Virus record (IMG/VR): IMGVR_UViG_3300033143_001962
Location: 1-64,000 of that record
DNA: 64,000 bases
Strand: one strand, 5' to 3'
Position numbers and translations under genes: made by a program. Positions within the stretch are counted from its first letter, which is position 1. Each line of letters opens with the position of its first letter. Shown here piece after piece: positions 1,598 to 29,743 of the stretch. The notes under the pieces are model-generated. The model saw only the letters and a program-made list of their open reading frames with translations, was not told the DNA's origin and made no database searches.

Positions 1598-1605
1598 TAT
1601 TTATC
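1598..1605 (-). promoter_or_regulatory. T4-type late promoter variant GATAAATA
   Basis: Matches the T4 late consensus TATAAATA at 7/8 positions; about 80 nt upstream of 922..1515. Confidence 0.55.
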
Positions 1606-2401
1606 AAGTTTCAGCATTTGGGTTGGCAATTAAGTTATCAATAATTCCTAATGATTCATTGAAGAAATGATCTGCTACCCGTTCATGCCAATCTGAATCA
1701 GGATGCATTCCATCTCGTGCGCCTGTGTTCATTACAAAAGGATTGTTGTCTTGCATTTGGTGCTGTATTAGTGTTTCAACTACCGGGTTGCAGAAGAATG
1801 ACGAGTAGTGGCTGTGGAACATCGTTCTCAAAAAACTTAAATTTTTTCTAAAATTAAATAACAAGTAGTCTTCATCTACAAGTTGTTTCGGAAAGCCTGA
1901 ATCTTCAATGGCAGTCTGGATTATTTTTCCATCGTTGTGTTCGTACGGTAATTCTAAACGTGTAATTGGTGGCCAGTACACAAAGACTAAGTGAGGCTTT
2001 AAGTCTGCATCGACTTTGTAAATAGTACGAGTAACATAATCAGAACTTGCGCCGCTTGTGGATAGATTATACGCTACTACAGACTGCGTGGTATAATCTG
2101 CTATTTTTTGTTTTAACTTATTAGCCCAAATTTCATGCTGATCAACACCAACACCAACTGACATACTACACCCTACGATAAGAATTCTAAAGGCCGCTTC
2201 ATCGTAAAAACTATCTGATCTAAAGCCGTGCTCGTTAAATGTGTACTTGATATCTTTTTCGTACTGTGCGTTCTCAGGCGTGTCAGTATCCAACCAATCC
2301 ACTGTCATGTTAGGCGGATACATGTTACTTGTTGGTAGTTCCTTATCCCATGCTGTCCTTGCGCTTGTATTGTAAAGCCGTTCCCTTTGCTTCCAGGTCA
2401 T
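1604..2401 (-). CDS. SGNH/GDSL-hydrolase-like protein
   Basis: FNEHGFRSD, IVGCSMSVGVG (block I), NLSTSGAS (block II), RDGMHP (DxxH). Start moved to MTWK at 2401, which gives an ATGA overlap with the upstream gene. Confidence 0.6.
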   Translation of the reverse strand: MTWKQRERLYNTSARTAWDKELPTSNMYPPNMTVDWLDTDTPENAQYEKDIKYTFNEHGFRSDSFYDEAAFRILIVGCSMSVGVGVDQHEIWANKLKQKIADYTTQSVVAYNLSTSGASSDYVTRTIYKVDADLKPHLVFVYWPPITRLELPYEHNDGKIIQTAIEDSGFPKQLVDEDYLLFNFRKNLSFLRTMFHSHYSSFFCNPVVETLIQHQMQDNNPFVMNTGARDGMHPDSDWHERVADHFFNESLGIIDNLIANPNAET

Positions 2402-2577
2402 ACTTTTTTCACCGGGCTTCCAAAATACAATATCACCGGCCATGCTAATGCCCACGCTATTAATCGTATTATGTAATTTATAATGCTACTTGAAACACCA
2501 GACGTGTGTTGAATATACACCCAACATACTGCACCAATCACACAATACAGTAAAACAAAAATATCTATTTCAATCAT
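2398..2577 (-). CDS. small two-helix membrane protein, 59 aa (not in ORF track)
   Basis: MIEIDIFVLLYCVIGAVCWVYIQHTSGVSSSIINYIIRLIAWALAWPVILYFGSPVKKV; ATGA overlaps on both sides. Confidence 0.7.
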   Translation of the reverse strand: MIEIDIFVLLYCVIGAVCWVYIQHTSGVSSSIINYIIRLIAWALAWPVILYFGSPVKKV

Positions 2578-4522: not shown

Positions 4523-4731
4523 TTTAATTTATCCTCAGGGATGGACATTGCATCGTGTATCCTCTGCATGTACTGTTCTCTGAATTTATGCATCGTTGGC
4601 TGCACTGCTGTTTTAATAACATCTATATCTATATCTGCCCATCTATGCCAGCCAGTCTTAGGCTTGTTATCACCTTTAAGCTTATCCCACATTATCCACT
4701 TAGCTGTCTTTGTTTTCTTCGTCTTTTTCAT
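4519..4731 (-). CDS. WxKL-tagged mini-protein
   Basis: Likely start MKKTKK. Contains IMWDKLKGDNKPKTGW, shared with 6000..6311. Confidence 0.6.
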   Translation of the reverse strand: MKKTKKTKTAKWIMWDKLKGDNKPKTGWHRWADIDIDVIKTAVQPTMHKFREQYMQRIHDAMSIPEDKLK

Positions 4732-4969
4732 ATTCTGCTCTGGCTTGTGCAAACTGTTTGTTAGTAATCGGGAGGCCGTGTATCGTCCCGTAAATATCAT
4801 CGTCAGACATTGGCTGTATGCCTACTATATCATTTGCTAATAGTGTTGGCATTACCTTTCTAATCATTGGTATCACTATACTATCAAACCCGGGCTTGTG
4901 TACTTTCTTCAAAGCCCTGAATGTTTTTTGTGCGTCACTTATTGTCTTTTTAGTTAGTTTAAAAGACAT
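4700..4969 (-). CDS. mini-protein carrying the major-capsid Gol-region fragment
   Basis: IVIPMIRKVMPTLLANDIVGIQPMS is 15/25 identical to MCP residues 60-84 in this window. Confidence 0.75.
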   Translation of the reverse strand: MSFKLTKKTISDAQKTFRALKKVHKPGFDSIVIPMIRKVMPTLLANDIVGIQPMSDDDIYGTIHGLPITNKQFAQARAEYEKDEENKDS

Positions 4970-5585: not shown

Positions 5586-5601
5586 TATTTCCTTATCTGT
5601 T

Positions 5602-6003
5602 TTATTCGTGTTGTCCAAACTCTACTCTCTCGGCCATATTTTTCTTAATTTGATTCTGACGGTTCATATTATGAATTGTTCTAGCAAACGATGAGCGACA
5701 TAATACTGTTAAATACGAATACGCATTGCTACTCTTAGTTTCATCGTATCTGTGATAGTACCGTAACATATTAGTAATTGCGTCTTGTATTAAGTCCTCA
5801 GCGTATGTAAACGATTGAAAATTTTTCCTAGTTAATTCTTTCTCTGCTAAATGTACAAGGTACTTTGCTAAGTTGCCAGTCGTTTGTTTAATCAGTTTCG
5901 AGTGACGTATTGCTTCGCGTAACTCTGCGTTGGTTGTGATCTCAACTTGGTTGTACCATGGTGCTTTTAACTTACGCCAAAATAATTTTTGTTCTTTGTT
6001 CAT
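5602..6003 (-). CDS. compact gp55-like (late sigma) paralogue with N-terminal WxKL tag
   Basis: TTGNLAKYL..L.E...R.N...FTY.ED....A......Y DETKSSNAYSY.T....SF.R aligns with 28673..29653. Confidence 0.75.
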   Translation of the reverse strand: MNKEQKLFWRKLKAPWYNQVEITTNAELREAIRHSKLIKQTTGNLAKYLVHLAEKELTRKNFQSFTYAEDLIQDAITNMLRYYHRYDETKSSNAYSYLTVLCRSSFARTIHNMNRQNQIKKNMAERVEFGQHE

Positions 6004-6311
6004 ACAGAAGACGATTCAAAGTCTATTAGAATGGGGCTGTTTTTAGTACGTACTGCCCGGCCAAGACTCTGGAAAGCGATCATACTTTTCCCTACACCAG
6101 ACTGTGCTGTGAATCCATTTATGAAGCTACGGTTAATACCGTGCATGAAGTTTGATGCTTCTGCAAGATTCCGCCAACCTGTTTTCTTAGGTGTATTATC
6201 GCCACTAAGCTTGTTCCATATTTGCGAGGGTGTGCCGTGTATCTTTTCAAACTGCTTACGTTTGCCGTTTGCTATCTTACGTTTATTAATCTGTACTTTA
6301 CTTTCTTTCAT
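6000..6311 (-). CDS. WxKL-tagged mini-protein with RecA/DnaB-type Walker A fragment
   Basis: SQIWNKLS...TGWRNL...GINRSFINGFTAQSGVGKSMI...ILIDFE, then the protein ends. Confidence 0.65.
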   Translation of the reverse strand: MKESKVQINKRKIANGKRKQFEKIHGTPSQIWNKLSGDNTPKKTGWRNLAEASNFMHGINRSFINGFTAQSGVGKSMIAFQSLGRAVRTKNSPILIDFESSSV

Positions 6312-6463
6312 CGTGGTCCTGTATTCTTTGTTGGCTGTTTCATCGACAAAAATATACTAGATAGTAATTTCCATTCTTTCTGTGCTTCGGTGAGTGGAGG
6401 AGTGCTTAACTTCTTCCACATTTCGTGCTGTTCTCTTTCTTCTTTTGTTTTAAATATTTTCAC
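6308..6463 (-). CDS. WxKL-tagged mini-protein
   Basis: Likely GTG start after an AGGA RBS; EREQHEMWKKLS. Confidence 0.55.
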   Translation of the reverse strand: MKIFKTKEEREQHEMWKKLSTPPLTEAQKEWKLLSSIFLSMKQPTKNTGPR

Positions 6464-6743
6464 GGTGCTTCCTGAGTTTTGCTTTTGCTTGTACCCGTGT
6501 ACTAAAATCCGTAGATTCCACATCACGCATCAAATTTGCCAGTGCATCCCTTTCTTGTGCTAATCGTTTTTCTTCTTCGTAGTCAACATCAGCAGACATC
6601 ATTCGTGCTCTAATTCTGACAGACATATCCTGATCTTTACATAATAAATCCAAGTGCTTGCGGGTATGGATTAGCTCAATCTTTTCTTCTTGCGTCAGTG
6701 CTGAAATACGTAGCACATCAAATAAGTCTGTTTCAGTTGTCAT
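6450..6743 (-). CDS. small helical-repeat-like protein, paralogue of 8065..8268
   Basis: DLF..L...ALTQ.EK...I...KHLD....D.D..VR..AR. Confidence 0.6.
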   Translation of the reverse strand: MTTETDLFDVLRISALTQEEKIELIHTRKHLDLLCKDQDMSVRIRARMMSADVDYEEEKRLAQERDALANLMRDVESTDFSTRVQAKAKLRKHRENI

Positions 6744-6900
6744 ATAACGTTTTCTTCTTGCCCATTGTTGCCATTAAGTACGATCTGACTAGATAATTAT
6801 CTTGTACCGCGAAGTTAGGATCAATCCAATATGACTCAACGGCATGCTGAATGCTTCCGTACTTTAATTTTAAAAATGTTACCACTTGTTCAATTTCCAT
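6733..6900 (-). CDS. FLxLKYGS-family mini-protein, 55 aa (not in ORF track)
   Basis: MEIEQVVTFLKLKYGSIQHAVESYW...; directly downstream of a promoter. Confidence 0.65.
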   Translation of the reverse strand: MEIEQVVTFLKLKYGSIQHAVESYWIDPNFAVQDNYLVRSYLMATMGKKKTLYDN

Positions 6901-6949
6901 TTCTAATCGCCAATAGCCGCTTGTTTATGAGGTTGCGCTTTTAAGCTAC

Positions 6950-6979
6950 ATAATAACATTTTATGTTATAAAAAGTCAA
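6950..6979 (-). promoter_or_regulatory. sigma70-type early promoter
   Basis: TTGACT-18 nt-TATTAT with TGn extension. Confidence 0.6.
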
Positions 6980-6986
6980 GTATTTG

Positions 6987-7328
6987 CTAAACATCATTTG
7001 CCAAAATTGCTGTGGCTGATGGCTTTATGCGTTTACGATCGTTGTCGTACTGAGCTGTAGCAATTTCAATACTGCTTAAATGTTTTAATAATGAGTGGAG
7101 TTTTTTATCTTCGTTGCCTAACTTTGACCACATAATGTCTTTGCTGAACAAGGTGCGAATCGCGTTAACGTTTGTTTCAATTCTTTCTAACCTGCCATTG
7201 AACTCGCCTACGTTTCCATTGTGCTGCCGGACCGTGTGTGCGAGCTTAGTTTTCAACCCCGAAATTTCATCGTCTTTGTCACGGAGTTGTTGTTGCAGGT
7301 CTCTAATTAAATTCTTCTTAGCTGTCAT
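6987..7328 (-). CDS. coiled-coil protein with internal WxKL tag
   Basis: Heptad-rich N-half; KDIMWSKLG. Confidence 0.6.
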   Translation of the reverse strand: MTAKKNLIRDLQQQLRDKDDEISGLKTKLAHTVRQHNGNVGEFNGRLERIETNVNAIRTLFSKDIMWSKLGNEDKKLHSLLKHLSSIEIATAQYDNDRKRIKPSATAILANDV

Positions 7329-7380
7329 AAATCACCTAAATGTTATCAATACTACGCTTTCTTACTACGACTACGAGCTA

Positions 7381-7409
7381 AGTATAACATTTTTTGGTGC
7401 AGAAGTCAA
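7381..7409 (-). promoter_or_regulatory. sigma70-type early promoter
   Basis: TTGACT-17-TATACT with TGn extension. Confidence 0.75.
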
Positions 7410-7582
7410 GCTTTTCGCTTATTTAGGTTAATAAAGTTGTAATTATTGTATTGTTCTTTGGAGTACAGTAGGAGTGCTTTGTGTTCGTCGTTGGATAGAT
7501 TGATATCATTGTTGACCCAAAGGTCGAATGCGTTTGTCATGCTGCCGTACTTGAGAATTAGAAAGGTTTTTGCCTGGTCCAT
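7406..7582 (-). CDS. FLxLKYGS-family mini-protein, 58 aa (not in ORF track)
   Basis: MDQAKTFLILKYGSMTNAFDLW... Confidence 0.65.
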   Translation of the reverse strand: MDQAKTFLILKYGSMTNAFDLWVNNDINLSNDEHKALLLYSKEQYNNYNFINLNKRKA

Positions 7583-7634
7583 AGTAAATATTTACCATAG
7601 TACGGCTTTTTACGTGGGGGCGCTTTTGACCCTA

Positions 7635-7663
7635 AGTATAACGTTTTGTTATTTAAAAGTCAA
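7635..7663 (-). promoter_or_regulatory. sigma70-type early promoter
   Basis: TTGACT-17-TATACT. Confidence 0.75.
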
Positions 7664-7869
7664 GTTTTTATTAGCAGTTTGAAGAACATTGCGTCTTGCT
7701 CTTGCTCAAACCAGAAGACTGGGGCGGTGTACTGATATATAAATTTGCCAGTGGTGTGCTTGCTGCACCATGCGGATAGTTCTAATAGATTATTTTTACT
7801 ATGTGTGAATGATACTTTATACCATGTGTTTCTATCAAAGGCATCGTAACATTCTTGATTCTTTTTCAT
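7660..7869 (-). CDS. small hypothetical phage protein (W-C...FWFEQEQDAMFFKL type)
   Basis: Overlaps the upstream gene (ATGA); motif style common in small phage proteins. Confidence 0.6.
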   Translation of the reverse strand: MKKNQECYDAFDRNTWYKVSFTHSKNNLLELSAWCSKHTTGKFIYQYTAPVFWFEQEQDAMFFKLLIKT

Positions 7870-8072
7870 CGGAAGTTATTTATTTTTTTCAGTATATCAA
7901 GCAACTCCGGAATGTCCGGGTGTAAGTCCGGATCAATGCTATCCAGCCAGTGCTTGAACTCTTGGTCGTATTTTTGTATATTGATTTCTTTAATGAGCTC
8001 TAATTTCTGCTCGGTGGTTAAATACTCTTTGGTTAATCTATGCCACAGTTCTTTCTTTTCTTCTTCACTCAC
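7866..8072 (-). CDS. mini-protein with N-terminal WxRL tag
   Basis: MSEEEKKELWHRLT. Confidence 0.6.
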   Translation of the reverse strand: MSEEEKKELWHRLTKEYLTTEQKLELIKEINIQKYDQEFKHWLDSIDPDLHPDIPELLDILKKINNFR

Positions 8073-8268
8073 TTTGCCATCCTAGCGTTTTAAGTTGTTT
8101 GTTTATTCTAACGTACTCTTGTTTATGCTTTTGCTTTCTTGCGTATCTTCTAACTTCACTATCATCATCGTTTTCAAAATAATCTAAGTGCTTGTTACTA
8201 GCAATGCATAACATCTTTTCGTACTGAGTGAGGGCGTTTAATTTTATAATTGTGAATAAATCTTCCAT
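8065..8268 (-). CDS. paralogue of 6450..6743
   Basis: Likely start MEDLF; ALTQYEK...KHLDYFENDDDSEVRRYAR. Confidence 0.6.
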   Translation of the reverse strand: MEDLFTIIKLNALTQYEKMLCIASNKHLDYFENDDDSEVRRYARKQKHKQEYVRINKQLKTLGWQSE

Positions 8269-8373
8269 AGCTATGTCTGTGTTTTTGCGCTTGGGCAACT
8301 CACTTCGTGCCTTGCGTTCTCTCTGTAAGTTACAGTCGAACCTACTCACCAAGCTCCTTGCTTTCGCAGACTA

Positions 8374-8403
8374 AGCATAACATATTTTAGAGGCAAAAGT
8401 CAA
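8374..8403 (-). promoter_or_regulatory. sigma70-type early promoter
   Basis: TTGACT-18-TATGCT with TGn extension. Confidence 0.6.
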
Positions 8404-8418
8404 CCGAGGTTTGCCAAA

Positions 8419-8859
8419 CTAAACGTTGTCGTTTTCATGTAGGCGTGTGTATAATGATAGTGCTAAATCAAATTGCATAATATGTGACATTATCCAGGGA
8501 CGGATTATCGATACTAAGTAGTATCCCATAACTTTTGGATTATGCGATAACTGTGATGTGTCAGCAACTTGATGACGTATATCATTGTGTGATTCTTTGT
8601 GACAATCGGCTGCTAATTTAGGAAATCCAATTCTATGCATTAGTGCTTCTTCGTGTTCTAAATGTGTGTCAACGTAGTCAACTAGCTCATCGTAGTACTG
8701 CTGAATGTGCTCTATTGTTGGGTCATCGTGTGTAATTTCGTTAATAATATTATTGCATAATTTAAACAGATTTCGGTGTTCGTTATCTATTTGTAAGTCG
8801 CCTGTTTCAAGGTCAGGTTGCCATTCTAACGGCGTTAGATTATCGGATTGTGGGGTCAT
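8419..8859 (-). CDS. bacteriohemerythrin
   Basis: W...LETGDLQIDNEH..LF, HLEHEEALM, HKESH, WIMSHIMQFD: complete hemerythrin di-iron ligand set (H, HxxxE, HxxxH, HxxxxD). Confidence 0.9.
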   Translation of the reverse strand: MTPQSDNLTPLEWQPDLETGDLQIDNEHRNLFKLCNNIINEITHDDPTIEHIQQYYDELVDYVDTHLEHEEALMHRIGFPKLAADCHKESHNDIRHQVADTSQLSHNPKVMGYYLVSIIRPWIMSHIMQFDLALSLYTRLHENDNV

Positions 8860-8891
8860 TGTATAGTCCTATTTTAAGTTAGCTATTAGTA

Positions 8892-8920
8892 ATTGTAGCA
8901 CGGAATCGCACCAAAGTCTA
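8892..8920 (-). promoter_or_regulatory. sigma70-type promoter for hemerythrin
   Basis: TAGACT-17-TACAAT with TGn; a GATAAATA late-type box also lies at 8930..8937. Confidence 0.55.
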
Positions 8921-8942
8921 GTAGTTTTTTATTTATCGTGTT

Positions 8943-9089
8943 TCATTTTAATGCAAAAAATTCGTTAAGCATATTGAATTCTGCTACTGGCATTTTAGCG
9001 ACTGCTGACCAATTCATCATCATATCATATGCTTTTTGTTGTGATCCGTACTTAATAACAATGAATGATTTTATTTCTTCAGTACTCAT
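8943..9089 (-). CDS. FLxLKYGS-family mini-protein
   Basis: Likely start MSTEEIKSFIVIKYGSQQKAYD. Confidence 0.6.
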   Translation of the reverse strand: MSTEEIKSFIVIKYGSQQKAYDMMMNWSAVAKMPVAEFNMLNEFFALK

Positions 9090-9261
9090 AAGTGTACGCT
9101 CCTGTTCGGCGATTATTGTCTTTTGCCCATTGTGCAATCAGATCTGATTCTTCTTGTGTAAATGAGGTATCATCAAATTTATACATCCATTCTTCATAAG
9201 CAAGTATCATACTACCGTACTTTAGTACAAGAATTAGTTCAGTGTCTTTACCCGTTTTCAT
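9079..9261 (-). CDS. FLxLKYGS-family mini-protein
   Basis: ELILVLKYGSMILAYEEW. Confidence 0.65.
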   Translation of the reverse strand: MKTGKDTELILVLKYGSMILAYEEWMYKFDDTSFTQEESDLIAQWAKDNNRRTGAYTYEY

Positions 9262-9403
9262 CTGACCACCATTCCATAAATTCAGTTAGCATTGCGTCGA
9301 GATCTGTACCTAAATCGTCACCTGTAAAATTACAATACACCATTACAATGTCATCATTGGACCCGTAACGTAATCTTAAATATGTTAGTACCGCTGGATT
9401 CAT
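9248..9403 (-). CDS. FLxLKYGS-family mini-protein, 51 aa (not in ORF track)
   Basis: MNPAVLTYLRLRYGSNDDIVMVY...; ATGA overlap with 9400..9618. Confidence 0.6.
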   Translation of the reverse strand: MNPAVLTYLRLRYGSNDDIVMVYCNFTGDDLGTDLDAMLTEFMEWWSDENG

Positions 9404-9618
9404 GCTTTTAACTTTGCCCACATGTACAATCTATTAATTTCTTCGTCAAACTCAGGTGTGCGTATCGTGTACCCTTTGCCGTTAATTCTATACTGGTAAT
9501 TATCAAAATCGTAAGTCTTAGGTGCAGAGACTCTGTAGTGTCTGACCCAGAACAATGTGCCATTTAAGCATTCGTATACTACATCACGTTGGTGCATTAT
9601 AACCGAGACACTATTCAT
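9400..9618 (-). CDS. RINGxxY-family mini-protein with C-terminal WxKL tag
   Basis: YRINGKGY...EFDEEINRLYMWAKLKA. Confidence 0.6.
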   Translation of the reverse strand: MNSVSVIMHQRDVVYECLNGTLFWVRHYRVSAPKTYDFDNYQYRINGKGYTIRTPEFDEEINRLYMWAKLKA

Positions 9619-9940
9619 CTTTCTTCTCCGGGACGTGGTCTACTACTAATCTAAGTTCATGCATTGTTAAACGTGTGTACATACCAGGTGGTAGATTTAT
9701 CCAGTAATGATATGCATTAAACACTGACCCGTACTTCCAAATTAGTACCATCTCGGCGTTATCTTTAGTAACATCCAATGTCTCCAGGCAGCCCTGTTCG
9801 CACCATAAATTTAATAGTGGTGGTACATTTTCAACTGTTCTGACTCCTGGCATGTTAACTGCTACTTCAAACGCTGTGATCACTTCTCCGATTGAAGAGT
9901 ACTTAAGTGACAGGAATACTTGCTGTTCATCTTCAGTCAC
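9611..9940 (-). CDS. tandem two-domain FLxLKYGS-family protein
   Basis: VFLSLKYSS and MVLIWKYGSVFNAY. Confidence 0.65.
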   Translation of the reverse strand: MTEDEQQVFLSLKYSSIGEVITAFEVAVNMPGVRTVENVPPLLNLWCEQGCLETLDVTKDNAEMVLIWKYGSVFNAYHYWINLPPGMYTRLTMHELRLVVDHVPEKKDE

Positions 9941-10124
9941 TTAGCTTCTCCCACACACGTTCTTTCTTACGTTCTTCATAAAATGCTTTTCTGTACTCAA
10001 GTGTATTTTCACTGTACAGTACATCGTTAATACGAAGTGTAACCCAGCTTTGTGAAATTGCACTTTGTCGTAGCGTACTGCATACTTGCGCAAATTTACC
10101 ACTGCTTAATTCAATTTCAATCAC
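9933..10124 (-). CDS. RINGxxY-family mini-protein with C-terminal WxKL tag
   Basis: LRINDVLY...KERVWEKLSD. Confidence 0.6.
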   Translation of the reverse strand: MIEIELSSGKFAQVCSTLRQSAISQSWVTLRINDVLYSENTLEYRKAFYEERKKERVWEKLSD

Positions 10125-10311
10125 TTAGCTTCTGCCATATCTCTGCTTTTTCAATAAATTCTGTTGCTGCTCGTCTAAATGCGTACGAATCTTTTTTGTA
10201 AATAACACCTTTAATTCTGAACGTGTGCCACGCAAAATTAGGATTCTTTAAACGTGGCACATTAGCCTTCACCCAATACCCGCAGTACTTTTCTCTATAA
10301 TGTGCTTTCAT
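10117..10311 (-). CDS. RINGxxY-family mini-protein with C-terminal WxKL tag
   Basis: FRIKGVIY...KAEIWQKLSD. Confidence 0.6.
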   Translation of the reverse strand: MKAHYREKYCGYWVKANVPRLKNPNFAWHTFRIKGVIYKKDSYAFRRAATEFIEKAEIWQKLSD

Positions 10312-10320
10312 ACCCGCCTA

Positions 10321-10497
10321 CTAATAGTTGTGCTCTTGCTGAACAAATCGATAATACCAATCTAACATCTCGTGTCGTTGTACTGTAGTAAACAAATCAT
10401 AATCGCTTCGTAAGTCGCCGTCACGCATTGCGTCGTAAGCGTTAGCCATGCTCCCGTACTTTAATATTAAGAATGTTCTAGTCTTTTCAGGACTCAT
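10321..10497 (-). CDS. FLxLKYGS-family mini-protein, 58 aa (not in ORF track)
   Basis: MSPEKTRTFLILKYGSMANAYDAM... Confidence 0.65.
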   Translation of the reverse strand: MSPEKTRTFLILKYGSMANAYDAMRDGDLRSDYDLFTTVQRHEMLDWYYRFVQQEHNY

Positions 10498-10696
10498 TGT
10501 ACAATTCCTTTATGAAGAAGTCAAGCATCAATTCTTCTTGTTGATTAACATTCATTAAATGGTATGCTATCTGGTCTCCGAATTCAAGCGAGTCATGAAA
10601 CGCATCAGCTAACTGTTCTAAGCCGCCGTGTTTAAGTGCTAAGAATGTGTATTCCTCGGTTGTTATAAAATCATCAAGTTCAACGGTTTCAGTCAT
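10487..10696 (-). CDS. FLxLKYGS-family mini-protein
   Basis: YTFLALKHGGLEQLADAF. Confidence 0.6.
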   Translation of the reverse strand: MTETVELDDFITTEEYTFLALKHGGLEQLADAFHDSLEFGDQIAYHLMNVNQQEELMLDFFIKELYNES

Positions 10697-10697
10697 T

Positions 10698-10886
10698 TTA
10701 ATCCCACATGTACCTGCGTCTGTTCAATTCACTGTCAGTTGCGTAGTAAAAGTAATTGTTCATTATTGTGTAGTCATCCGGCACTTGCTTTCCAACAACG
10801 GTACTAGTATTCATAAAGACTTGATAGGCTTTGTACACCGTACCGTACTTTAAAATTAAATAAGATTTAGTTGCTGCGTAGTTCAT
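10698..10886 (-). CDS. FLxLKYGS-family mini-protein
   Basis: KSYLILKYGTVYKAYQVF. Confidence 0.65.
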   Translation of the reverse strand: MNYAATKSYLILKYGTVYKAYQVFMNTSTVVGKQVPDDYTIMNNYFYYATDSELNRRRYMWD

Positions 10887-11086
10887 AATATGATCTTCTG
10901 TACACGTTCAGGAATTATTAAATCACCTTGTTCCTTTTTAGATTTAATATGCGATTGAATAAAGCTTAGTAATTTGTAGTAGTCTGGATCACTGTCGAGT
11001 CCTAGTGATCGCAATGCACTGTACCTAGAAAAGATATGTGCTACGCTTCCATATTTAAGCATAAGGAATGTGTCTTCAGAATTCAT
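10883..11086 (-). CDS. FLxLKYGS-family mini-protein
   Basis: DTFLMLKYGSVAHIF. Confidence 0.65.
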   Translation of the reverse strand: MNSEDTFLMLKYGSVAHIFSRYSALRSLGLDSDPDYYKLLSFIQSHIKSKKEQGDLIIPERVQKIIL

Positions 11087-11277
11087 TAAATTAAATCCAT
11101 TGCATATTCCATTGCAGATTTAGTTCTTATCGCAAGATGGTGTGCCCAAGCATACCCTACTATCATGCATTGTTCATCTTCTGTAAAATCAGCATCCCAA
11201 TCATCAGATATGTTATAAGCATCAATGGCATTTTCCATGCTACCGTACTTTAATATTAAGAATGTTTTAATTGGCAT
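11086..11277 (-). CDS. FLxLKYGS-family mini-protein
   Basis: KTFLILKYGSMENAIDAY. Confidence 0.65.
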   Translation of the reverse strand: MPIKTFLILKYGSMENAIDAYNISDDWDADFTEDEQCMIVGYAWAHHLAIRTKSAMEYAMDLI

Positions 11278-11516
11278 TATGATTTACCGTACACTGTGGT
11301 AATTGTAGGGGCAAATACCCCATTCAATGCTGCCCAAGCTTCTAATGGTTTTACTACTTCATCGAACTCATCGGATGGTTTTTCATATATAAACCCATTT
11401 ATTTTAAAGTCAAACCTCTTAAAATTGTACTGGCGATCAGCCATTATTGTTGACTCTCTCCATACGCTGTCAAAGATTTCTCTATTTTTTGAGTACAAAA
11501 TGTCCTGATTAGCCAT
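11277..11516 (-). CDS. RINGxxY-family mini-protein
   Basis: Likely start MANQD, downstream of the promoter; FKINGFIY...EFDEVVKPLEAWAALN. Confidence 0.6.
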   Translation of the reverse strand: MANQDILYSKNREIFDSVWRESTIMADRQYNFKRFDFKINGFIYEKPSDEFDEVVKPLEAWAALNGVFAPTITTVYGKS

Positions 11517-11546
11517 GGTTATTACCCTTCTGAACGAATATAATGT

Positions 11547-11575
11547 AGTGTAACAGGTTATTTTGGGAAAGTCAA
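11547..11575 (-). promoter_or_regulatory. sigma70-type early promoter heading the mini-gene array
   Basis: TTGACT-17-TACACT with TGn extension. Confidence 0.7.
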
Positions 11576-11608
11576 GCTTTTGATAGGCACTCATTAATAA
11601 ATATATTA

Positions 11609-12091
11609 GTGAACTACTTAATACTAATTGACGTTTGGGGACGATTGTCAACACCGTTAGAGATCATTTGTAAAACTAATATAGCATTATTAATATCTGA
11701 TGTCTCAGACAATCCAAATTGGAAAATAATATATCAGGATTTTGATCCTGATATCGATCCTAAAATTCAGCACGTTTGCAACAATTCAAATAATGCAATA
11801 CCCGAGCACGATTGGGCTAATTTAAAATTAGATTCAAAAGACATAGTGTACTTTGCTGGGTTTCATGCTAATCACTGTTTGTTTGAGAAACCGTTAGGTA
11901 TTGATAATCTATTAAGTTTGCACCCTGCTCAAGAATTTTTTGTGTTATCCGACCTAACATGTGGGCTGAATCAACACACTCCTGTACCTATCAGTGACTT
12001 ATCTATTATTAATTTCAATAATGATTATAGTGTAAAAATGAACATGCGGCGCGCAATGCTGCTCGATAATTTACTTAGTATACAAATTTAA
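11609..12091 (+). CDS. isochorismatase/cysteine-hydrolase-like protein
   Basis: LILIDVW ... VYFAGFHANHCL ... VLSDLT. Confidence 0.55.
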   Translation: MNYLILIDVWGRLSTPLEIICKTNIALLISDVSDNPNWKIIYQDFDPDIDPKIQHVCNNSNNAIPEHDWANLKLDSKDIVYFAGFHANHCLFEKPLGIDNLLSLHPAQEFFVLSDLTCGLNQHTPVPISDLSIINFNNDYSVKMNMRRAMLLDNLLSIQI

Positions 12092-12094
12092 GTC

Positions 12095-12123
12095 AAAAAA
12101 AAGCACTCCGAAGAGTGCTTTTT
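12095..12123 (-). terminator. intrinsic terminator after major capsid gene (likely bidirectional)
   Basis: Minus strand AAAAAGCACTC-TTCG-GAGTGCTTTTTTTT with a UUCG tetraloop. Confidence 0.9.
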
Positions 12124-12146
12124 AGATATTGCTTTACTACCTGGTC

Positions 12147-13337
12147 TTAGCTGAAAGACAAGTTGCTTACGCTGATTTCGCCTAAGTAATCACCAGCATT
12201 ACCAAAAGATGATGCAGTGTTAGTGAGTTCCACGTAACCATAACGTGTCATGAAGCTTACAACTGGTTCGAACGTAGACGGATCTAAAACAACGCCTGAG
12301 CTCATTAAAGGAATGTAAGGGCAGTAGAACGCTGGAGCGTCTGCTTCACTTGAACCTTTATAACCAATAAGTACCGGAGTACTATCAGCAGCATATGAAT
12401 CAACATATACTTTCATAGCACTGTTTAATGTACCAACTAACTTAGTGTTAGTAGGAGCTTCAAAAGTACCTTCAGTTGTACGTGCAAATGCAGATGTAGT
12501 AGCTGATTGTAATACTGTTAATGCAGCTGGACTAACAACGGCATAGTTACCTGCGCCACGACGTGTACGTTGTGCGATAAGGTTAGCAGTACGGTTAACT
12601 AATACAGCAAGTGCCGCATGTTCATCACCTACGAATGTAGCAGTACCAGATACAGCAGCTTGATCGTAGTTGAATTCAGTTGACGCTAAAGAACGTAAAG
12701 ATAATAAAATCTCTTGATCGATTTCAGCGGTAATTTCTTGTGCTAATGCAGCCATGATTTCAGCTTCGACATCAATGCCGTGCATTGATTGTGCATCTTG
12801 AGCAGCTTCAAAAGTCCAACGCGCTTGTAACTTACGTGTCTTCGCTTCAACAGCTTGCTTTAAGATTTGAACGGAAATGTTACGACCGCCTTCACCTTCC
12901 ATTTGCGCTGTAGCAGCACCACGGTAGTCAGTCTGTGTAGCACCAACGCCTGCAGAGTATGCTTGAGCAATTTTGAAAGGACTTAACGCTTCATCACCAG
13001 CTGTAGTTGGTGTACCAGCAGCAGATGTATCGTTCATTGTTGAACCGTAACGTACACGTAAAGTATGGATCTGGCTTACTGGACCAGACATTGGTTGAAC
13101 ACCTACTAATTCGTTTGCAATTACCGTAGGCATTACACGTCGAATTACTGGTAAAATTACACGGTTTAATGTTGCAACGTTACCAGCGGCAGTAGCGCCA
13201 CTTGTAGCAGATTCTGCTAAGTGGTTACGAGTGTTTTCTAGGATTACGCCCATTGTAGAACGTTTAGTACCGTCTAGACCTTCAAGCAATGCTTCTTTAG
13301 TCTCTCCCCAACGGCCTTCTAATAGTGCTTGTGACAT
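12147..13337 (-). CDS. gp23: major capsid protein (T4 gp23-like)
   Basis: RRVMPTVIANELVGVQPMSGP, KTRKLQARWTFEAAQD..HGID.EAE, FYCPYIPL, FMTRYG. Confidence 0.95.
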   Translation of the reverse strand: MSQALLEGRWGETKEALLEGLDGTKRSTMGVILENTRNHLAESATSGATAAGNVATLNRVILPVIRRVMPTVIANELVGVQPMSGPVSQIHTLRVRYGSTMNDTSAAGTPTTAGDEALSPFKIAQAYSAGVGATQTDYRGAATAQMEGEGGRNISVQILKQAVEAKTRKLQARWTFEAAQDAQSMHGIDVEAEIMAALAQEITAEIDQEILLSLRSLASTEFNYDQAAVSGTATFVGDEHAALAVLVNRTANLIAQRTRRGAGNYAVVSPAALTVLQSATTSAFARTTEGTFEAPTNTKLVGTLNSAMKVYVDSYAADSTPVLIGYKGSSEADAPAFYCPYIPLMSSGVVLDPSTFEPVVSFMTRYGYVELTNTASSFGNAGDYLGEISVSNLSFS

Positions 13338-13359
13338 ATCTAATTTTCTCCTGTTTAGA

Positions 13360-14454
13360 TTATAGCCCTGCTAACTTTTTAATGTCGATTACATTTGTAT
13401 CTTCATTTTTGTTAACAGCTTTATCACCAGTTACTGCAACGCGACTTTCTGTAACTACTTTACGTTTCTTAGGCGTAGTAGCTTCGATTGTTTTATTGGC
13501 AAGTACCGCTGGTAAATATTTTTCGAAAGTTTTATTCAAACGCGAAGTTTGAACGTTTTCGAGTAAATCCTGCATAACTACACGTTTGTCATCGTTGAGT
13601 GGACCTAACAAATCAGCTAATGTATCAGCACGTTTGTTATTTTCTGTAATTACTTTAATTTCATTATCTTTGCTTTCTGTAAGCTTTTGTAGTTTTGTAG
13701 CAATAACAACAGACTCTTTAATTTCTGTTTTCTGTGCTGCAACTTGATCCTTTAGCTTACGGATTTCTGCATTTTCGTTTAAGTGAGTACTTGTAAATTC
13801 ACTTGAGAACGCTTCAAATATTGTACGACCAAATGCGTTTTCACGCGCTGATTTAATATCTTCTTGTAATGCAGTTAGTTCAGATGACAGTTTTAACTTA
13901 ACATGGTTTTTAACTTTCGCAGCAGATTCTGTTACAAAGCGACTCTTAAGTGCTTTGAGTTGATCACGTGCTTCTGCAACTAGCTTAACCTTAGTATCAA
14001 CTAAGTCTTGCTTGTCTTGTGCAAATTCACGTATTTCTGTTGCTAACTTCTTAGAAACAAATTTTTCAATTGATTCTAAACCTTCGTTTTGCTTTTTGCG
14101 GTCATTGCGTAGTTCTTTAATTTCTTCAGCTAACTTAGCTGTCATGAAGTTATTAAACTTAGCACCACTCTCTGACATTTTCTTAATGAACTTAACACGA
14201 TCTTCTGCTAATGCAGATTTCTCTTCTTTAAATTCAACAATTTCAGAGTGCAAACCTTCGGTAACCATTTTGTCAAGAGCTTCAACCATCACTTTCTTAT
14301 CATGATCATAACGCTGTGCAAATTCTTCACGTAATTCAGTACGTAACTCTTCACGGGCTTCATTTAATTTTGAATCCCAAGCTTCCATAATTTCTGAATG
14401 TGTGTCTTCATTGATAACATTACTATCAAGCAACTGTTTGATTGCTTCTAACAT
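13360..14454 (-). CDS. gp22: prohead core scaffold protein (gp22-like)
   Basis: Long charged coiled coil located between protease and MCP. Confidence 0.75.
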   Translation of the reverse strand: MLEAIKQLLDSNVINEDTHSEIMEAWDSKLNEAREELRTELREEFAQRYDHDKKVMVEALDKMVTEGLHSEIVEFKEEKSALAEDRVKFIKKMSESGAKFNNFMTAKLAEEIKELRNDRKKQNEGLESIEKFVSKKLATEIREFAQDKQDLVDTKVKLVAEARDQLKALKSRFVTESAAKVKNHVKLKLSSELTALQEDIKSARENAFGRTIFEAFSSEFTSTHLNENAEIRKLKDQVAAQKTEIKESVVIATKLQKLTESKDNEIKVITENNKRADTLADLLGPLNDDKRVVMQDLLENVQTSRLNKTFEKYLPAVLANKTIEATTPKKRKVVTESRVAVTGDKAVNKNEDTNVIDIKKLAGL

Positions 14455-14465
14455 ATTTCAGTCTC

Positions 14466-15098
14466 CTAAATTTTAAGATCTTTGATAAACTTCATTACTT
14501 CAGTCTTCAAATATCTTTGTACACGTTTGTCCGTACTAGCTTCTTCTGCTATACCTAACATTTTAAGTCCGCCATTAAAATTCATAATGCCTTCGTATAT
14601 TGCTGTAGGGTACGCTTCAGGCGCACTAGGTTGGGCAACTATATCAACAGTGATTATTTCGAAATCACTGACGTGTCCGTTGGCTTCGTTAACATTGCCG
14701 CTTCCGCGACTTGATACACCTAACTTAACACCTGCTTCAAGCATAGTTTGAATAACTGTTCCTGAAGGTGTTGGTAGTATCTTTAACTTGCCATAACCGT
14801 TTGCGCCTTCCATCCACATATCTGTAATCATGTGCGACACACGGTCTAAATTTATTTTCAAATCTTCTGGATGATCTATTTCGCCTAAGACGCTATAGCC
14901 ACCCTTGATTTGTTCTTTTAGTGTTTGTACTGCGGTTGATATTTCATTTACTGGATATACACGTTGGTTTGCATTACGTTGGTCTCCCTGTATGCAAATG
15001 CCTTTCATGTATAAGTCTTTGCCGCCTGTGTCGTTAGCTTCGTTTAAAAGCTCGACTCTAGCAGCATCAAAAGATAAATGTTCCTGTAAAATTCCCAT
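14466..15098 (-). CDS. gp21: prohead protease (gp21-like)
   Basis: RNANQRVYP, LGEIDHP, VSHMIT, LGVSSRGSG, TVDIVAQPSAPEAY. Confidence 0.93.
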   Translation of the reverse strand: MGILQEHLSFDAARVELLNEANDTGGKDLYMKGICIQGDQRNANQRVYPVNEISTAVQTLKEQIKGGYSVLGEIDHPEDLKINLDRVSHMITDMWMEGANGYGKLKILPTPSGTVIQTMLEAGVKLGVSSRGSGNVNEANGHVSDFEIITVDIVAQPSAPEAYPTAIYEGIMNFNGGLKMLGIAEEASTDKRVQRYLKTEVMKFIKDLKI

Positions 15099-15105
15099 CG
15101 TAGTA

Positions 15106-15900
15106 TTAAGAACCGCTTAAGCTTTTCTTATTAACACCAGCATCTTCGCCCTTCTTCTTAGGCTCAGTTACTTTGCTTTCGTTTGGCTCAGTTGTACCAT
15201 CGCCTGGCTTAACACTAGGTGTTGCAACATTACCTTCTTCACCAGTTGTTTGGTGTGGCTTAGCTACTGCTCCAAGACCTTTCTTACCGCTGTTATCAGC
15301 GTTAACTGTAGTCTTGTTAGTACCTTCGCTTTCAGTGCTGTTTGAAATACCTTTAGTTACTTTAGTTAAAGCAACGTTTTCGTTAAAACCTTCAAGTTCT
15401 GGTTCCATACCCATGTCACCACCCATTTCAGCGTCCATACCCATGTCATCGCCCATTTCTGGTTCCATGCCCATTTCGTCGCCCATGCCTTCATCACCAC
15501 CCATCATTGAGTCGAATTCAGCCATTAATGAATCTAATTGATCTTCTAAATCAACTACACGGTCTTCTAATTCTGCGTCTTCTTCGTCGCCTGCAACGTG
15601 ATCCATTTCATGTGAATCCATATCACCTGAATCATCAAAGTCATTATGACTTTCGCCAGCTTCGTCACCAATTTCAGGTGCCATCATATCGTCGTCTTCT
15701 GCTTCACTCATACCTTCTTCATCAGCTGCAATGTCGTTGACTAATTCGTCAGCTTGATCACCACCAAAGTTATCTTGGTCCATAAGTGACTCATAAATGT
15801 CACGAGATTTTTCAACTACGATTTCGTGGAAGAGGTCCGAAGCTTTTGCTTCTTCTTCATTGATAACGTACTCAATTAATTTTTCAAATTTATTACTCAT
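15106..15900 (-). CDS. acidic prohead core protein (gp67-like position)
   Basis: Very acidic, low complexity, with MGDEMGMEPE-type repeats; lies in the head module. Confidence 0.55.
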   Translation of the reverse strand: MSNKFEKLIEYVINEEEAKASDLFHEIVVEKSRDIYESLMDQDNFGGDQADELVNDIAADEEGMSEAEDDDMMAPEIGDEAGESHNDFDDSGDMDSHEMDHVAGDEEDAELEDRVVDLEDQLDSLMAEFDSMMGGDEGMGDEMGMEPEMGDDMGMDAEMGGDMGMEPELEGFNENVALTKVTKGISNSTESEGTNKTTVNADNSGKKGLGAVAKPHQTTGEEGNVATPSVKPGDGTTEPNESKVTEPKKKGEDAGVNKKSLSGS

Positions 15901-29653: not shown

Positions 29654-29681
29654 ACATCTCCTTGTAGCTTTAGATTTAACT

Positions 29682-29709
29682 ATTATAGCACATAAGCATA
29701 ATAAGTCAA
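29682..29709 (-). promoter_or_regulatory. sigma70-type promoter for gp55-47-46 operon
   Basis: TTGACT-16-TATAAT with TGn extension. Confidence 0.7.
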
Positions 29710-29743
29710 CCATAATTTATTATATTGGGTTATAATATGTACT

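What the first reader, a model, noticed from the sequence alone, without database searches (positions are those of the whole stretch)
6733..11277. Expanded family of 11 mini-genes (12 domains) with a FLxLKYGS..AY motif
Copies at 6733, 7406, 8943, 9079, 9248, 9611 (twice), 10321, 10487, 10698, 10883 and 11086; four of them are below the ORF-track cutoff. The conserved N-terminal motif is followed by highly divergent 30-45 aa tails. A constant head with variable tails suggests a second adaptor class with diversified target specificity (inference). No ORF here carries both this motif and the WxKL tag.
Basis: partly seen in the sequence, partly recalled or inferred. Interest (0 to 1): 0.65.

Follow-up and report, generated by a model that had tools for sequence, protein, structure and literature searches.

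The report
Expanded three-helix mini-protein family in jumbo phage
An uncultured T4-like jumbo phage carries a dozen copies of a previously undescribed 50-70 residue three-helix protein, apparently made early in infection; the family is real and selected, and copy number among relatives runs from 1 to at least 24, but its function is still only inferred.

Summary
Eleven minus-strand genes (12 domains) at 6733-11277 share the FLxLKYGS..A(Y/F)..W motif. A profile built only from other phages' proteins recovers all eleven, plus a twelfth gene at genome 107413-107616. Conservation is at protein level, and orthologue dN/dS is 0.14-0.18.

AlphaFold2 gives one compact three-helix bundle (pLDDT 95). 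The "head" is helix 1, a Gly-Ser turn and helix 2. The "tail" keeps a conserved helix-3 signature, F-[TS]-x-[DE]-E...L..Y. So this is one small domain with variable surface, loop and C-terminal end, not a tag plus free tails.

No Pfam, PHROG, PDB, BFVD or cultured-phage relative was found. About 80 representative clusters exist, all metagenomic.

The genes lie in a variable region downstream of the major capsid gene. A repeated sigma-70-type promoter cassette precedes them, and they are packed with overlapping starts and stops.

Relatives carry 1, 3, 11 and at least 24 copies. Most window paralogues are old, with positional orthologues elsewhere.

The proteins are mostly acidic.

Best reading: early, diversified protein-binding modules aimed at host or phage proteins. 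That function is inferred; expression and partners are untested.

The parts
6733..6900 (-). LKYGS-family gene, 55 aa, with its own promoter-like site upstream
   Evidence: external-profile E 4.8e-9; positional orthologue in L025
7406..7582 (-). LKYGS-family gene, 58 aa
   Evidence: E 1.6e-19; orthologue P0039 at 60% identity
8943..9089 (-). LKYGS-family gene, 48 aa from the ATG at 9089 (the longer TTG frame runs to 9137); last gene of the 13-gene block
   Evidence: (P0001 is the same 48-aa call); orthologue in L025 at 77% identity, dN/dS 0.14
9079..9261 (-). LKYGS-family gene, 60 aa
   Evidence: E 4.5e-16; orthologue P0030/L025 at 70% identity, dN/dS 0.18
9248..9403 (-). LKYGS-family gene (LRLRYGS variant), 51 aa from the ATG at 9403, which overlaps the upstream stop as ATGA
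   Evidence: P0005; E 1e-4
9611..9940 (-). Two-domain gene, 109 aa: a divergent N-terminal unit (LKYSSIGE) plus a canonical C-terminal unit (IWKYGS)
   Evidence: eight two-domain orthologues; two three-helix units, pLDDT 84.5, pTM 0.72; each unit forms its own clade
10321..10497 (-). LKYGS-family gene, 58 aa; the member that was folded
   Evidence: pLDDT 95; helices 3-14, 17-29, 38-56; E 3.9e-14
10487..10696 (-). LKYGS-family gene (LALKHGG variant), 69 aa, net charge -14
   Evidence: E 3.5e-3; E 3e-17 with the window profile
10698..10886 (-). LKYGS-family gene (LKYGT), 62 aa
   Evidence: E 1.7e-12
10883..11086 (-). LKYGS-family gene, 67 aa
   Evidence: E 8.7e-6
11086..11277 (-). LKYGS-family gene, 63 aa
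   Evidence: E 1.1e-16; orthologue P0007 at 70% identity, clade support 96
11547..11575 (-). Sigma-70-type promoter-like cassette (TTGACT, spacer, TGTTACACT) heading the block of 13 overlapping mini-genes, 11516 down to 8943
6950..6979 (-). Promoter-like cassette upstream of gene 6733-6900
7635..7663 (-). Promoter-like cassette upstream of gene 7406-7582
7381..7409 (-). Promoter-like cassette upstream of the non-family gene 6987-7328
8374..8403 (-). Promoter-like cassette upstream of 8065-8352; kept at the same relative position in L025
12068..12123 (-). Terminator stem-loop after the capsid gene (12098-12123), directly followed by a TTGACT promoter-like site (12068-12096); this is the boundary between the head module and the variable region
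   Evidence: stem-loop -15.7 kcal/mol
9400..9618 (-). Interleaved gene of the other (WxKL) family; further members at 9933-10124, 10117-10311 and 11277-11516

Best explanation
The LKYGS genes encode a phage-specific, autonomous domain of about 50 residues that folds as a three-helix bundle.

How the domain is built:
- The motif T-F-L-x-L-K-Y-G-S...A-(Y/F)..W is helix 1, a two-residue Gly-Ser turn, and helix 2.
- It packs against helix 3, which has its own signature F-(T/S)-x-(D/E)-E...L..(Y/F/W).
- The conserved 'head' is therefore the folding core (shown by prediction and column statistics).
- What varies is the exposed faces of helix 2, the helix 2-3 loop and the C-terminal extension.

Where the genes sit:
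- They lie in a variable (hyperplastic) region just downstream of the T4-type head module.
- They follow a terminator and a repeated host-type (sigma-70-like) promoter cassette.
- They are strung together with overlapping stops and starts, so they are probably made together early in infection (inferred from sequence signals).

How the family evolved:
- Most window paralogues are old and have their own orthologues, some of them positional, in related phages.
- Orthologues evolve under purifying selection.
- Copy number differs strongly between relatives (1, 3, 11, at least 24), by indels and by tandem bursts.

Most likely function (inference): each paralogue is a small, mostly acidic protein-binding module. 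Each would bind a different host protein, or possibly a phage protein, during takeover or counter-defence, using one stable scaffold with diversified surfaces.
For: Family and protein-level selection; dN/dS 0.14-0.18 against orthologues in L025.

Fold: pLDDT 95, pTM 0.78, three helices. The two-domain member folds as two such units.

Core-like conservation, including helix 3.

No known family or fold:
- Pfam and PHROGs, for all 79 members.
- PDB sequences.
- Foldseek on PDB and BFVD, E > 3.
- VIA-align wide search, best Z 4.6.

Only small proteins among 84 hits in 1.84 billion representatives, with no fusions.

Acidic: 84% have pI below 7, median 5.2.

Promoter cassette:
- Six strict matches in the genome against 0.37 in shuffles, five of them inside 6950-11575.
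- The flanks are alignable.
- The same motif occurs in the arrays of L001, L024, L025 and L002.
- A terminator follows the capsid gene.

Old paralogues: 7 of 12 have a closer external homologue than any in-genome paralogue. Window members are scattered on the tree, whereas 15 of 24 L001 members form one clade. Gene order is shared with L025.

Copy-number variation in the same syntenic interval.
Against: - No expression data.
- No binding partner is known.
- Three-helix bundles are generic, so the fold says little about function.
- Six consecutive conserved residues in helix 1 are more than a monomeric core strictly needs. This leaves room for a conserved interaction surface.
- Synonymous sites are saturated among paralogues, so diversifying selection on the variable parts is not shown.
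- Early timing rests on promoter resemblance only.
Confidence: 0.45

Rival explanations
1. Adaptor model. The conserved helix-1/turn/helix-2 face docks every paralogue onto one common partner, such as a host machine like RNA polymerase or a protease, or a phage complex. The variable parts then recruit or block different targets.
For: - Six consecutive conserved positions in helix 1, including position 11, which is 92% hydrophobic and should point away from the bundle core.
- A nearly invariant Lys13.
- A similar short string, T-(Y/F)-F-x-L-(K/R)-Y-G, at the C-terminal end of an unrelated mini-gene family in the same genome. Profile comparison gives it only 9.7% probability.
- A conserved tandem two-domain gene suggests that the units can sit side by side.
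Against: - Head and tail are one folded domain.
- Conserved residues follow a core pattern, and Lys13 can pair with conserved Glu40 on the buried face of helix 3. This is an inference from helical periodicity.
- In the window, position 11 is K, R, S or A in four members.
- No partner has been identified.
Confidence: 0.17
2. Small nucleic-acid-binding proteins. The Lys-Tyr-Gly-Ser hairpin and the N-terminus of helix 2 would contact phosphate backbones, like a helix-hairpin-helix unit. The family would then act as transcription factors or DNA/RNA-coating proteins.
For: - Three of the ten nearest ESM-Atlas shapes are HhH or SAM-fold clusters, with TM 0.50-0.60.
- There is a conserved Lys next to a Gly-Ser helix cap.
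- Precedent: a roughly 35-copy zinc-ribbon expansion in Bacillus phage G, proposed to be transcription factors or DNA-binding proteins (PMC7824862).
Against: - The family is acidic: 84% have pI below 7, and window members range from net charge -14 to +2.
- Only one conserved basic residue.
- The hairpin is one residue shorter than the HhH consensus and lacks its first Gly (consensus from my own knowledge, compared).
- No PDB match: Foldseek E > 6, best Z 4.6.
- TM around 0.5 for 50 helical residues means little.
Confidence: 0.1
3. Packaged internal head proteins. As with T4 IPI-III, a conserved N-terminal string would target the proteins to the prohead core, and the variable remainder would be injected to counter host defences.
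For: - The array lies directly downstream of the portal, protease, scaffold and major capsid module, in this phage and in L001, L024 and L011.
- The pattern of a conserved N-terminus and a variable rest resembles the T4 internal-protein locus (own knowledge).
Against: - A strong terminator separates the array from the capsid gene, and the array has host-type promoters.
- Only 6 of 82 members have an (L/I)-x-E string in the first 25 residues, at no fixed position.
- The motif is part of the fold rather than a leader peptide.
Confidence: 0.07
4. Non-functional ORFs or decaying duplicates with no role of their own.
For: - Very short genes with weak ribosome-binding sites for several members.
- No expression data.
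Against: - dN/dS is 0.14-0.18, similar to neighbouring genes and to the capsid gene at 0.12.
- Positional orthologues exist in other phages.
- Synonymous codon turnover under a fixed motif.
- A confident fold.
- About 80 representative clusters in independent samples.
Confidence: 0.03

Closest known systems
Hyperplastic regions of T4-type phages with promoter-early/stem-loop (PeSL) cassettes (Arbiol et al. 2010, PMC2839356; Comeau et al. 2014, PMC4122927)
   Same: - A block of small genes of unknown function between conserved core modules.
- Gene content differs between close relatives.
- A repeated early-type promoter cassette lies between genes.
- A terminator stem-loop is fused to a promoter at the module border.
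   Different: - Here one protein family fills much of the region: 11 of about 25 genes.
- Most internal cassettes lack a convincing stem-loop.
- The phage is a distant jumbo relative, with capsid protein 64-68% identical to PA5oct and Vibrio phage 2.275.O.
Lineage-specific expansion of a small domain in a jumbo phage: about 35 zinc-ribbon copies in Bacillus phage G (Iyer et al. 2021, PMC7824862)
   Same: Many paralogous copies of a tiny domain in one large phage genome, with function only guessed.
   Different: - Different fold: an all-helical bundle with no Cys/His metal site.
- Acidic rather than DNA-binding in character.
- Most window copies are old orthologue groups rather than one recent burst.
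T4 internal proteins IPI, IPII and IPIII (own knowledge)
   Same: - Small phage proteins with a shared N-terminal string and a variable remainder.
- The locus is polymorphic between relatives.
- The locus lies near head genes here.
   Different: - No conserved protease site.
- The motif is a folded core.
- The promoters are host-type.
Three-helix-bundle binder scaffolds such as the protein A Z domain and its engineered 'affibody' derivatives (own knowledge; a functional analogy only)
   Same: A domain of about 58 residues and three helices, where a fixed core can carry many different binding surfaces.
   Different: - No sequence or significant structural match.
- Binding has not been shown for any member.
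Helix-hairpin-helix motif
   Same: Two antiparallel helices joined by a tight Gly-containing turn, followed by a conserved Ala. The nearest Atlas shapes include HhH clusters.
   Different: - The turn is shorter and lacks the G-h-G pattern.
- The proteins are acidic.
- The scores are not significant.

Membership tests
Any Pfam-A or PHROGs family | Profile match at or near the family threshold | tested here: not met
   Window members scored singly gave nothing below E 0.02. All 79 members of A2 gave 0 Pfam families at E <= 0.01, and only four single-member PHROG hits with E between 9e-4 and 6e-3.
Helix-hairpin-helix (HhH) | Hairpin consensus h-x-x-h-x-G-h-G-x-x-x-A-x-x-h-h | tested here: not met
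   The family columns read L-K-Y-G-S-h-x-x-A. That is one Gly only, and the Ala is five residues after it rather than four. The consensus is recalled from my own knowledge.
Helix-hairpin-helix (HhH) | Significant structural superposition on HhH domains | tested here: inconclusive
   Atlas TM is 0.50-0.60 to HhH and SAM-fold clusters. No HhH chain appears among the PDB matches: Foldseek E > 6, best VIA Z 4.6.
Helix-hairpin-helix (HhH) | Binds nucleic acid | not testable with these tools
   The only indirect evidence is that 84% of members have pI below 7.
T4-type internal head proteins | N-terminal targeting peptide ending in an (L/I)-x-E prohead-protease site | tested here: not met
   6 of 82 members have such a string in the first 25 residues, at no fixed position.
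T4-type internal head proteins | Present in virions | not testable with these tools
   The phage is uncultured and no proteome is available.
Hyperplastic-region genes with PeSL cassettes (T4-type phages) | Variable gene content between conserved core blocks in close relatives | tested here: met
   The interval from the capsid gene to the 283-aa gene is 3.1 kb in L011, 9.1 kb in L024 and 9.7 kb in the window, with 1, 3 and 11 family genes. Indels relative to L025 are shown.
Hyperplastic-region genes with PeSL cassettes (T4-type phages) | Repeated early (sigma-70-like) promoter between genes | tested here: met
   The strict motif occurs 6 times against 0.37 expected, 5 of them within 6950-11575. 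The cassettes are alignable and the same motif occurs in related arrays. Promoter activity itself was not tested.
Hyperplastic-region genes with PeSL cassettes (T4-type phages) | Stem-loop terminator joined to the promoter | tested here: inconclusive
   Clear at 12098-12123 (-15.7 kcal/mol) and at genome 106425 (-12.9). Weak or absent at the other five.
Anti-CRISPR / anti-defence loci | Small acidic proteins next to an HTH regulator (aca-like) gene | tested here: not met
   The proteins are small and acidic. No neighbour in 5600-11650 has an HTH match; the Pfam hits there at E below 0.001 are Sigma70_r2 (5602-6003), hemerythrin (8419-8859) and a below-threshold coiled-coil match on 6987-7328.
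Anti-CRISPR / anti-defence loci | Inhibits a host defence system | not testable with these tools
   The host is unknown.

The most novel reading that the evidence does not exclude
The family is a natural, phage-encoded library of miniature three-helix binders. There is one rigid core, dozens of diversified surfaces, and each neutralises a different host defence or housekeeping protein in the first minutes of infection. Copy number (1 to at least 24) would then track the defence repertoire of each phage's hosts, and the conserved two-domain gene would be a fixed heterodimer of two such binders.
Probability: 0.2. Interest if true: 0.7.

Novelty: new member of a known kind. Interest (0 to 1): 0.4.

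Why it matters
Variable regions of large phages are full of tiny early genes that nobody can name. Here one such region turns out to be dominated by a single, confidently folded and selectively maintained domain. It is absent from Pfam, PHROGs, the PDB and all cultured phages searched.

This gives a defined family of about 80 representative clusters. It also gives a clear profile, a structural model and natural copy-number contrasts (1, 3, 11, at least 24). Together these make the question 'what do these mini-genes do?' testable by expression, pull-down and toxicity screens.

If the members prove to be diversified binders, they would be a source of new host-takeover or counter-defence factors, and of a compact natural binding scaffold. 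If not, the result is still a clean example of how paralogue families build up in phage hyperplastic regions.

Tried and rejected
- Self-association: a two-copy complex-prediction job on the folded member gave 'no answer'. It is not evidence either way.
- Fold relatives: Foldseek on PDB and BFVD, VIA-align wide, and ESM-Atlas by shape and by features all gave nothing significant.
- The PDB sequence profile search gave only a chance ankyrin-like LLKYGA string, at E 1.2.
- Cultured phages: tblastn with three members found no match at E <= 1. The megablast of the region also found nothing. Vibrio phage 2.275.O, the nearest cultured capsid relative, has no copy.
- Bacterial and archaeal species genomes: no relative at the pattern [TA]FLILKYGS.
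- IMG/VR:
  - Alignment A2 was too divergent for the locus finder.
  - The two-domain pattern found nothing.
  - A first DNA pattern had too few fixed bases.
  - The corrected pattern found L009, a 99.88% identical fragment of this phage, and L011.
- The whole record behind L024 is not held, so its total copy number is unknown.
- The contig carrying P0007 had no DNA available.
- P0019 and P0082 among the 84 profile hits are repetitive proteins. I treated them as false positives.
- Positive selection: synonymous sites are saturated among paralogues, even in the L001 burst (pS 0.55-0.72). The high pN/pS of 0.8-0.9 in helix 2, the loop and the tail therefore cannot be read as positive selection.
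- Nucleotide-level motif (a promoter or repeat masquerading as a peptide motif): rejected because of the synonymous codon variation.
- Link to the C-terminal F-x-L-K-Y-G string of the 80815-82065 family: hhalign probability 9.7% over 13 columns, so it is kept only as a lead.
- A literature search found nothing on this family.

Full report
**Setting**

The window is the first 64 kb of a single-contig virus record of 249,797 bp. It has a T4-type head module on the minus strand:
- portal, 16559-18259;
- prohead protease, 14466-15098, Peptidase_S77 at E 7e-25;
- scaffold-sized gene, 13360-14454;
- major capsid protein, 12147-13337.

The capsid protein is 68% identical to that of Vibrio phage 2.275.O and 64% identical to the PA5oct group. 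No cultured phage matches the region at the DNA level. Much closer uncultured relatives exist:
- a 344-kb metagenome contig (L024), capsid 93% identical;
- a 110-kb IMG/VR fragment (L011/G001), capsid 89% identical;
- a 37-kb contig (L001), about 74% nucleotide identity over the head genes;
- a 5.1-kb IMG/VR fragment (L009) that is 99.88% identical to window 10620-15740.

Yes. All eleven ORFs are present on the minus strand at the stated coordinates, and they align around T-F-L-x-L-K-Y-G-S...A-(Y/F)..W.

To avoid circularity I built a profile from 70 single-domain proteins of other phages only.
- It recovers all eleven window genes, plus a twelfth at genome 107413-107616.
- E-values run from 1.6e-19 to 3.5e-3.
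- The next hit among 4,779 stop-to-stop frames has E 0.47.

The motif is conserved as protein, not as DNA.
- Ser alternates between the AGY and TCN codon boxes.
- Gly uses all four codons.
- Leu uses five codons.
- Lys to Arg occurs as AAG to CGT.

Qualifications:
- The first unit of the two-domain gene is a divergent variant. It lacks the Gly at the usual place and scores only iE 1.7 with the external profile. It is conserved as such in eight two-domain orthologues and is modelled with the same helix pattern.
- Two genes probably start later than the longest frame, at 9089 and 9403. These starts agree with independent gene calls in the protein collection.
- The 'tails' are not wholly unrelated. 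Columns 36-47 carry a second signature: F 65%, T/S 71%, D/E 75%, E 70%, L/I/M 92% and Y/F/W 90%.

**What the protein is**

AlphaFold2, run with a 79-row alignment, gives a three-helix bundle for the 58-residue member at 10321-10497. Mean pLDDT is 95 and pTM 0.78. The helices span residues 3-14, 17-29 and 38-56.
- The motif is helix 1, a two-residue Gly-Ser turn, and the first half of helix 2.
- The second signature is the N-cap and the buried face of helix 3.
- From helical periodicity I infer that the nearly invariant Lys13 and Glu40 both lie on the inward faces. They could form an ion pair; no coordinates were available to check this.

The 109-residue gene folds as two such units (pLDDT 84.5, pTM 0.72).

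The family is mostly acidic. The median pI is 5.2, 84% of members are below pI 7, and window members range from net charge -14 to +2.

**Is it a known family?**

No.
- Pfam and PHROGs give nothing, for the window members or for all 79 aligned members.
- A profile search of PDB sequences gives only a chance ankyrin-like string.
- Foldseek against the PDB and BFVD has no match below E 3.
- The Foldseek-independent search of 48,161 chains peaks at Z 4.6, far below the level the tool itself calls meaningful for helical bundles.
- The Atlas shape search gives TM 0.5-0.6 to helix-hairpin-helix, SAM-fold and TPR pieces, which is generic.

An exhaustive profile search of 1.84 billion representatives finds 84 proteins, two of them repetitive false positives.
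- All the rest are 48-117 residues long.
- None is fused to another domain.
- The ten looked up are unnamed singletons from metagenome assemblies.

Three tblastn searches of 50,697 phage records found nothing. A scan of one genome per prokaryotic species also found nothing.

**Genomic anatomy**

A strong terminator follows the capsid gene (12098-12123, 11-bp stem). It runs straight into a TTGACT promoter-like site.

Inside the array, a cassette with the core TTGACT, 14-16 nt, (T/C)GTTAnnnT recurs.
- There are six strict matches in the genome, against 0.37 in shuffles.
- Five lie at 6950-11575, on the coding strand.
- The sixth lies in front of another mini-gene array at 106 kb.
- The cassettes also align beyond the hexamers.
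- The same motif stands in the arrays of L001, L024, L025 and L002. In L025 it sits at the same relative position as the window's site at 8374-8403.

The site at 11547-11575 falls inside the longest frame of ORF 11277-11654, whose real start is therefore probably the ATG at 11516. From there down to 8943, thirteen mini-genes follow with overlapping or abutting stops and starts. Eight are single-domain LKYGS genes, one is the two-domain gene, and four are WxKL genes.

I read this as one early, translationally coupled transcription unit plus several single-gene units. That reading is an inference from sequence signals.

**Evolution**

For seven of the twelve genes, the best homologue in other phages is clearly closer than any paralogue in the same genome: 40-73% identity against 21-52%.

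On a quick and weakly supported tree:
- The window copies are scattered (11 label changes for 12 rows, no better than shuffles).
- They pair with outside sequences.
- Fifteen of the 24 copies in L001 form one clade (support 90), and the L001 label is clustered (1 of 500 shuffles as low).
- The two units of the two-domain gene each form their own clade, with support 99 and 92.

A 3.25-kb contig of another relative (L025) keeps gene order with window 9421-6450. It includes orthologues of the genes at 9248, 9079, 8943, 7406 and 6733. It differs by an extra 269-aa gene, an extra family member, loss of the hemerythrin gene, and one local rearrangement.

Orthologue pairs give dN/dS of 0.18 and 0.14 at dS about 1.2. 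This is like the neighbouring genes (0.15) and the capsid gene (0.12).

The syntenic interval from the capsid gene to the conserved 283-aa gene (window 1604-2455) varies as follows:

| Genome | Interval length | Family genes |
|---|---|---|
| L011 | 3.1 kb | 1 |
| L024 | 9.1 kb | 3 |
| Window | 9.7 kb | 11 |
| L001 | more than 9 kb after the capsid gene | at least 24 |

In a six-member subclade of the L001 burst, pN/pS is 0.27 in helix 1 and 0.24 at the start of helix 3. It is 0.80-0.89 in helix 2, the loop and the C-tail. Synonymous sites are saturated, so this shows where constraint lies but does not show positive selection.

**Interpretation**

The architecture matches what Krisch and colleagues described for T4-type phages: hyperplastic regions of small early genes between core modules, with repeated promoter/stem-loop cassettes at which genes are swapped (PMC4122927; PMC2839356). 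Here only the border cassettes have a clear stem-loop.

What is unusual is that a single, well-folded domain family supplies 11 of the roughly 25 genes of the region. It has also expanded further in a relative.

The most economical mechanism is a stable three-helix scaffold whose exposed parts have diversified, made early and acting by binding proteins. The features behind this are small size, acidity, absence of catalytic or metal motifs, absence of fusions, and old, individually conserved paralogues. I put this at 0.45, because the function step is inference only.

Helix 1 is conserved on more faces than a core requires, and a look-alike string ends another mini-gene family. That resemblance is not significant, however, and the model shows no detachable head.

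The other rivals are weaker:
- Nucleic-acid binding, 0.10: argued against by charge and by the hairpin geometry.
- Packaged internal proteins, 0.07: argued against by the promoters and the lack of a protease site.
- Non-functional ORFs, 0.03: argued against by the selection results.

**Novelty and verdict**

This is a real, previously undescribed protein family, confined so far to an uncultured clade of T4-like jumbo phages. It belongs to a known kind of thing: lineage-specific expansions of tiny early genes in phage hyperplastic regions. The roughly 35 zinc-ribbon copies of phage G are a comparable case (PMC7824862).

Interest is moderate. The family is cleanly defined and experimentally tractable, but nothing yet shows an unusual mechanism.

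Noticed in passing
genome 104008-105903(-) and 212019-212869(-), outside the window: A second expanded mini-gene family of nine ORFs. They share a C-terminal motif close to H-P-x-(L/V)-K-D-A-W-E-K-Y-Q-x-x-L-K-L. The sixth strict promoter cassette (106397-106425) lies just upstream of the first block.
   Followed up: partly
window 7660-7869(-); genome 80815-82065(-) (L027): A four-member small family that ends in D-A-x-x-F-x-L-(K/R)-(Y/F)-G-(K/R). This resembles helix 1 of the LKYGS domain. The profile comparison aligns 13 columns at only 9.7% probability, so it may be chance or a shared short motif.
   Followed up: yes
window 9400-9618, 9933-10124, 10117-10311, 11277-11516 (all -): The WxKL genes are interleaved with the LKYGS genes. 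In 9933-10124 the C-terminal W-E-K-L-S-D codons contain the Shine-Dalgarno-like GGGAGAAG and the GTG start of the next gene. The paralogous 10117-10311 (W-Q-K-L-S-D) ends in a similar 8-nt overlap with the next gene's GTG start. Part of that 'tag' may therefore be constrained at the nucleotide level.
   Followed up: partly
window 4700-4969(-): An 89-aa ORF carries a stretch of about 28 residues that is 54% identical to residues 57-83 of the major capsid protein. The same feature appears in the related contig L024.
   Followed up: no
window 5602-6003(-) and 28673-29713(-): A 133-aa ORF with a Sigma-70 region 2 match (E 4e-5, just below the Pfam cut-off) is paralogous to part of a 346-aa ORF. 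It is conserved in L024 at 37% identity. It could be a phage sigma-like factor.
   Followed up: no
window 8419-8859(-): A hemerythrin-domain gene (E 5e-13) sits inside the mini-gene array behind its own promoter-like site. It is absent from the syntenic contig L025.
   Followed up: partly
window 39102-52130(+): A single open frame of 4,342 codons. It was not examined.
   Followed up: no
window 6450-6743(-) and 8065-8352(-): These two array genes are paralogues of each other, and both have positional orthologues in L025.
   Followed up: partly
L001 9492-16468 (NCBI assembly GCA_044343285.1, contig of 36,976 bp): A related phage contig carries at least 24 LKYGS-family genes in about 7 kb. Many share M-T-D-E-Q-I-K-M-M-L-I-L-K-Y-G-S and G-W-T-x-E-E-I. 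It is the largest expansion seen.
   Followed up: yes
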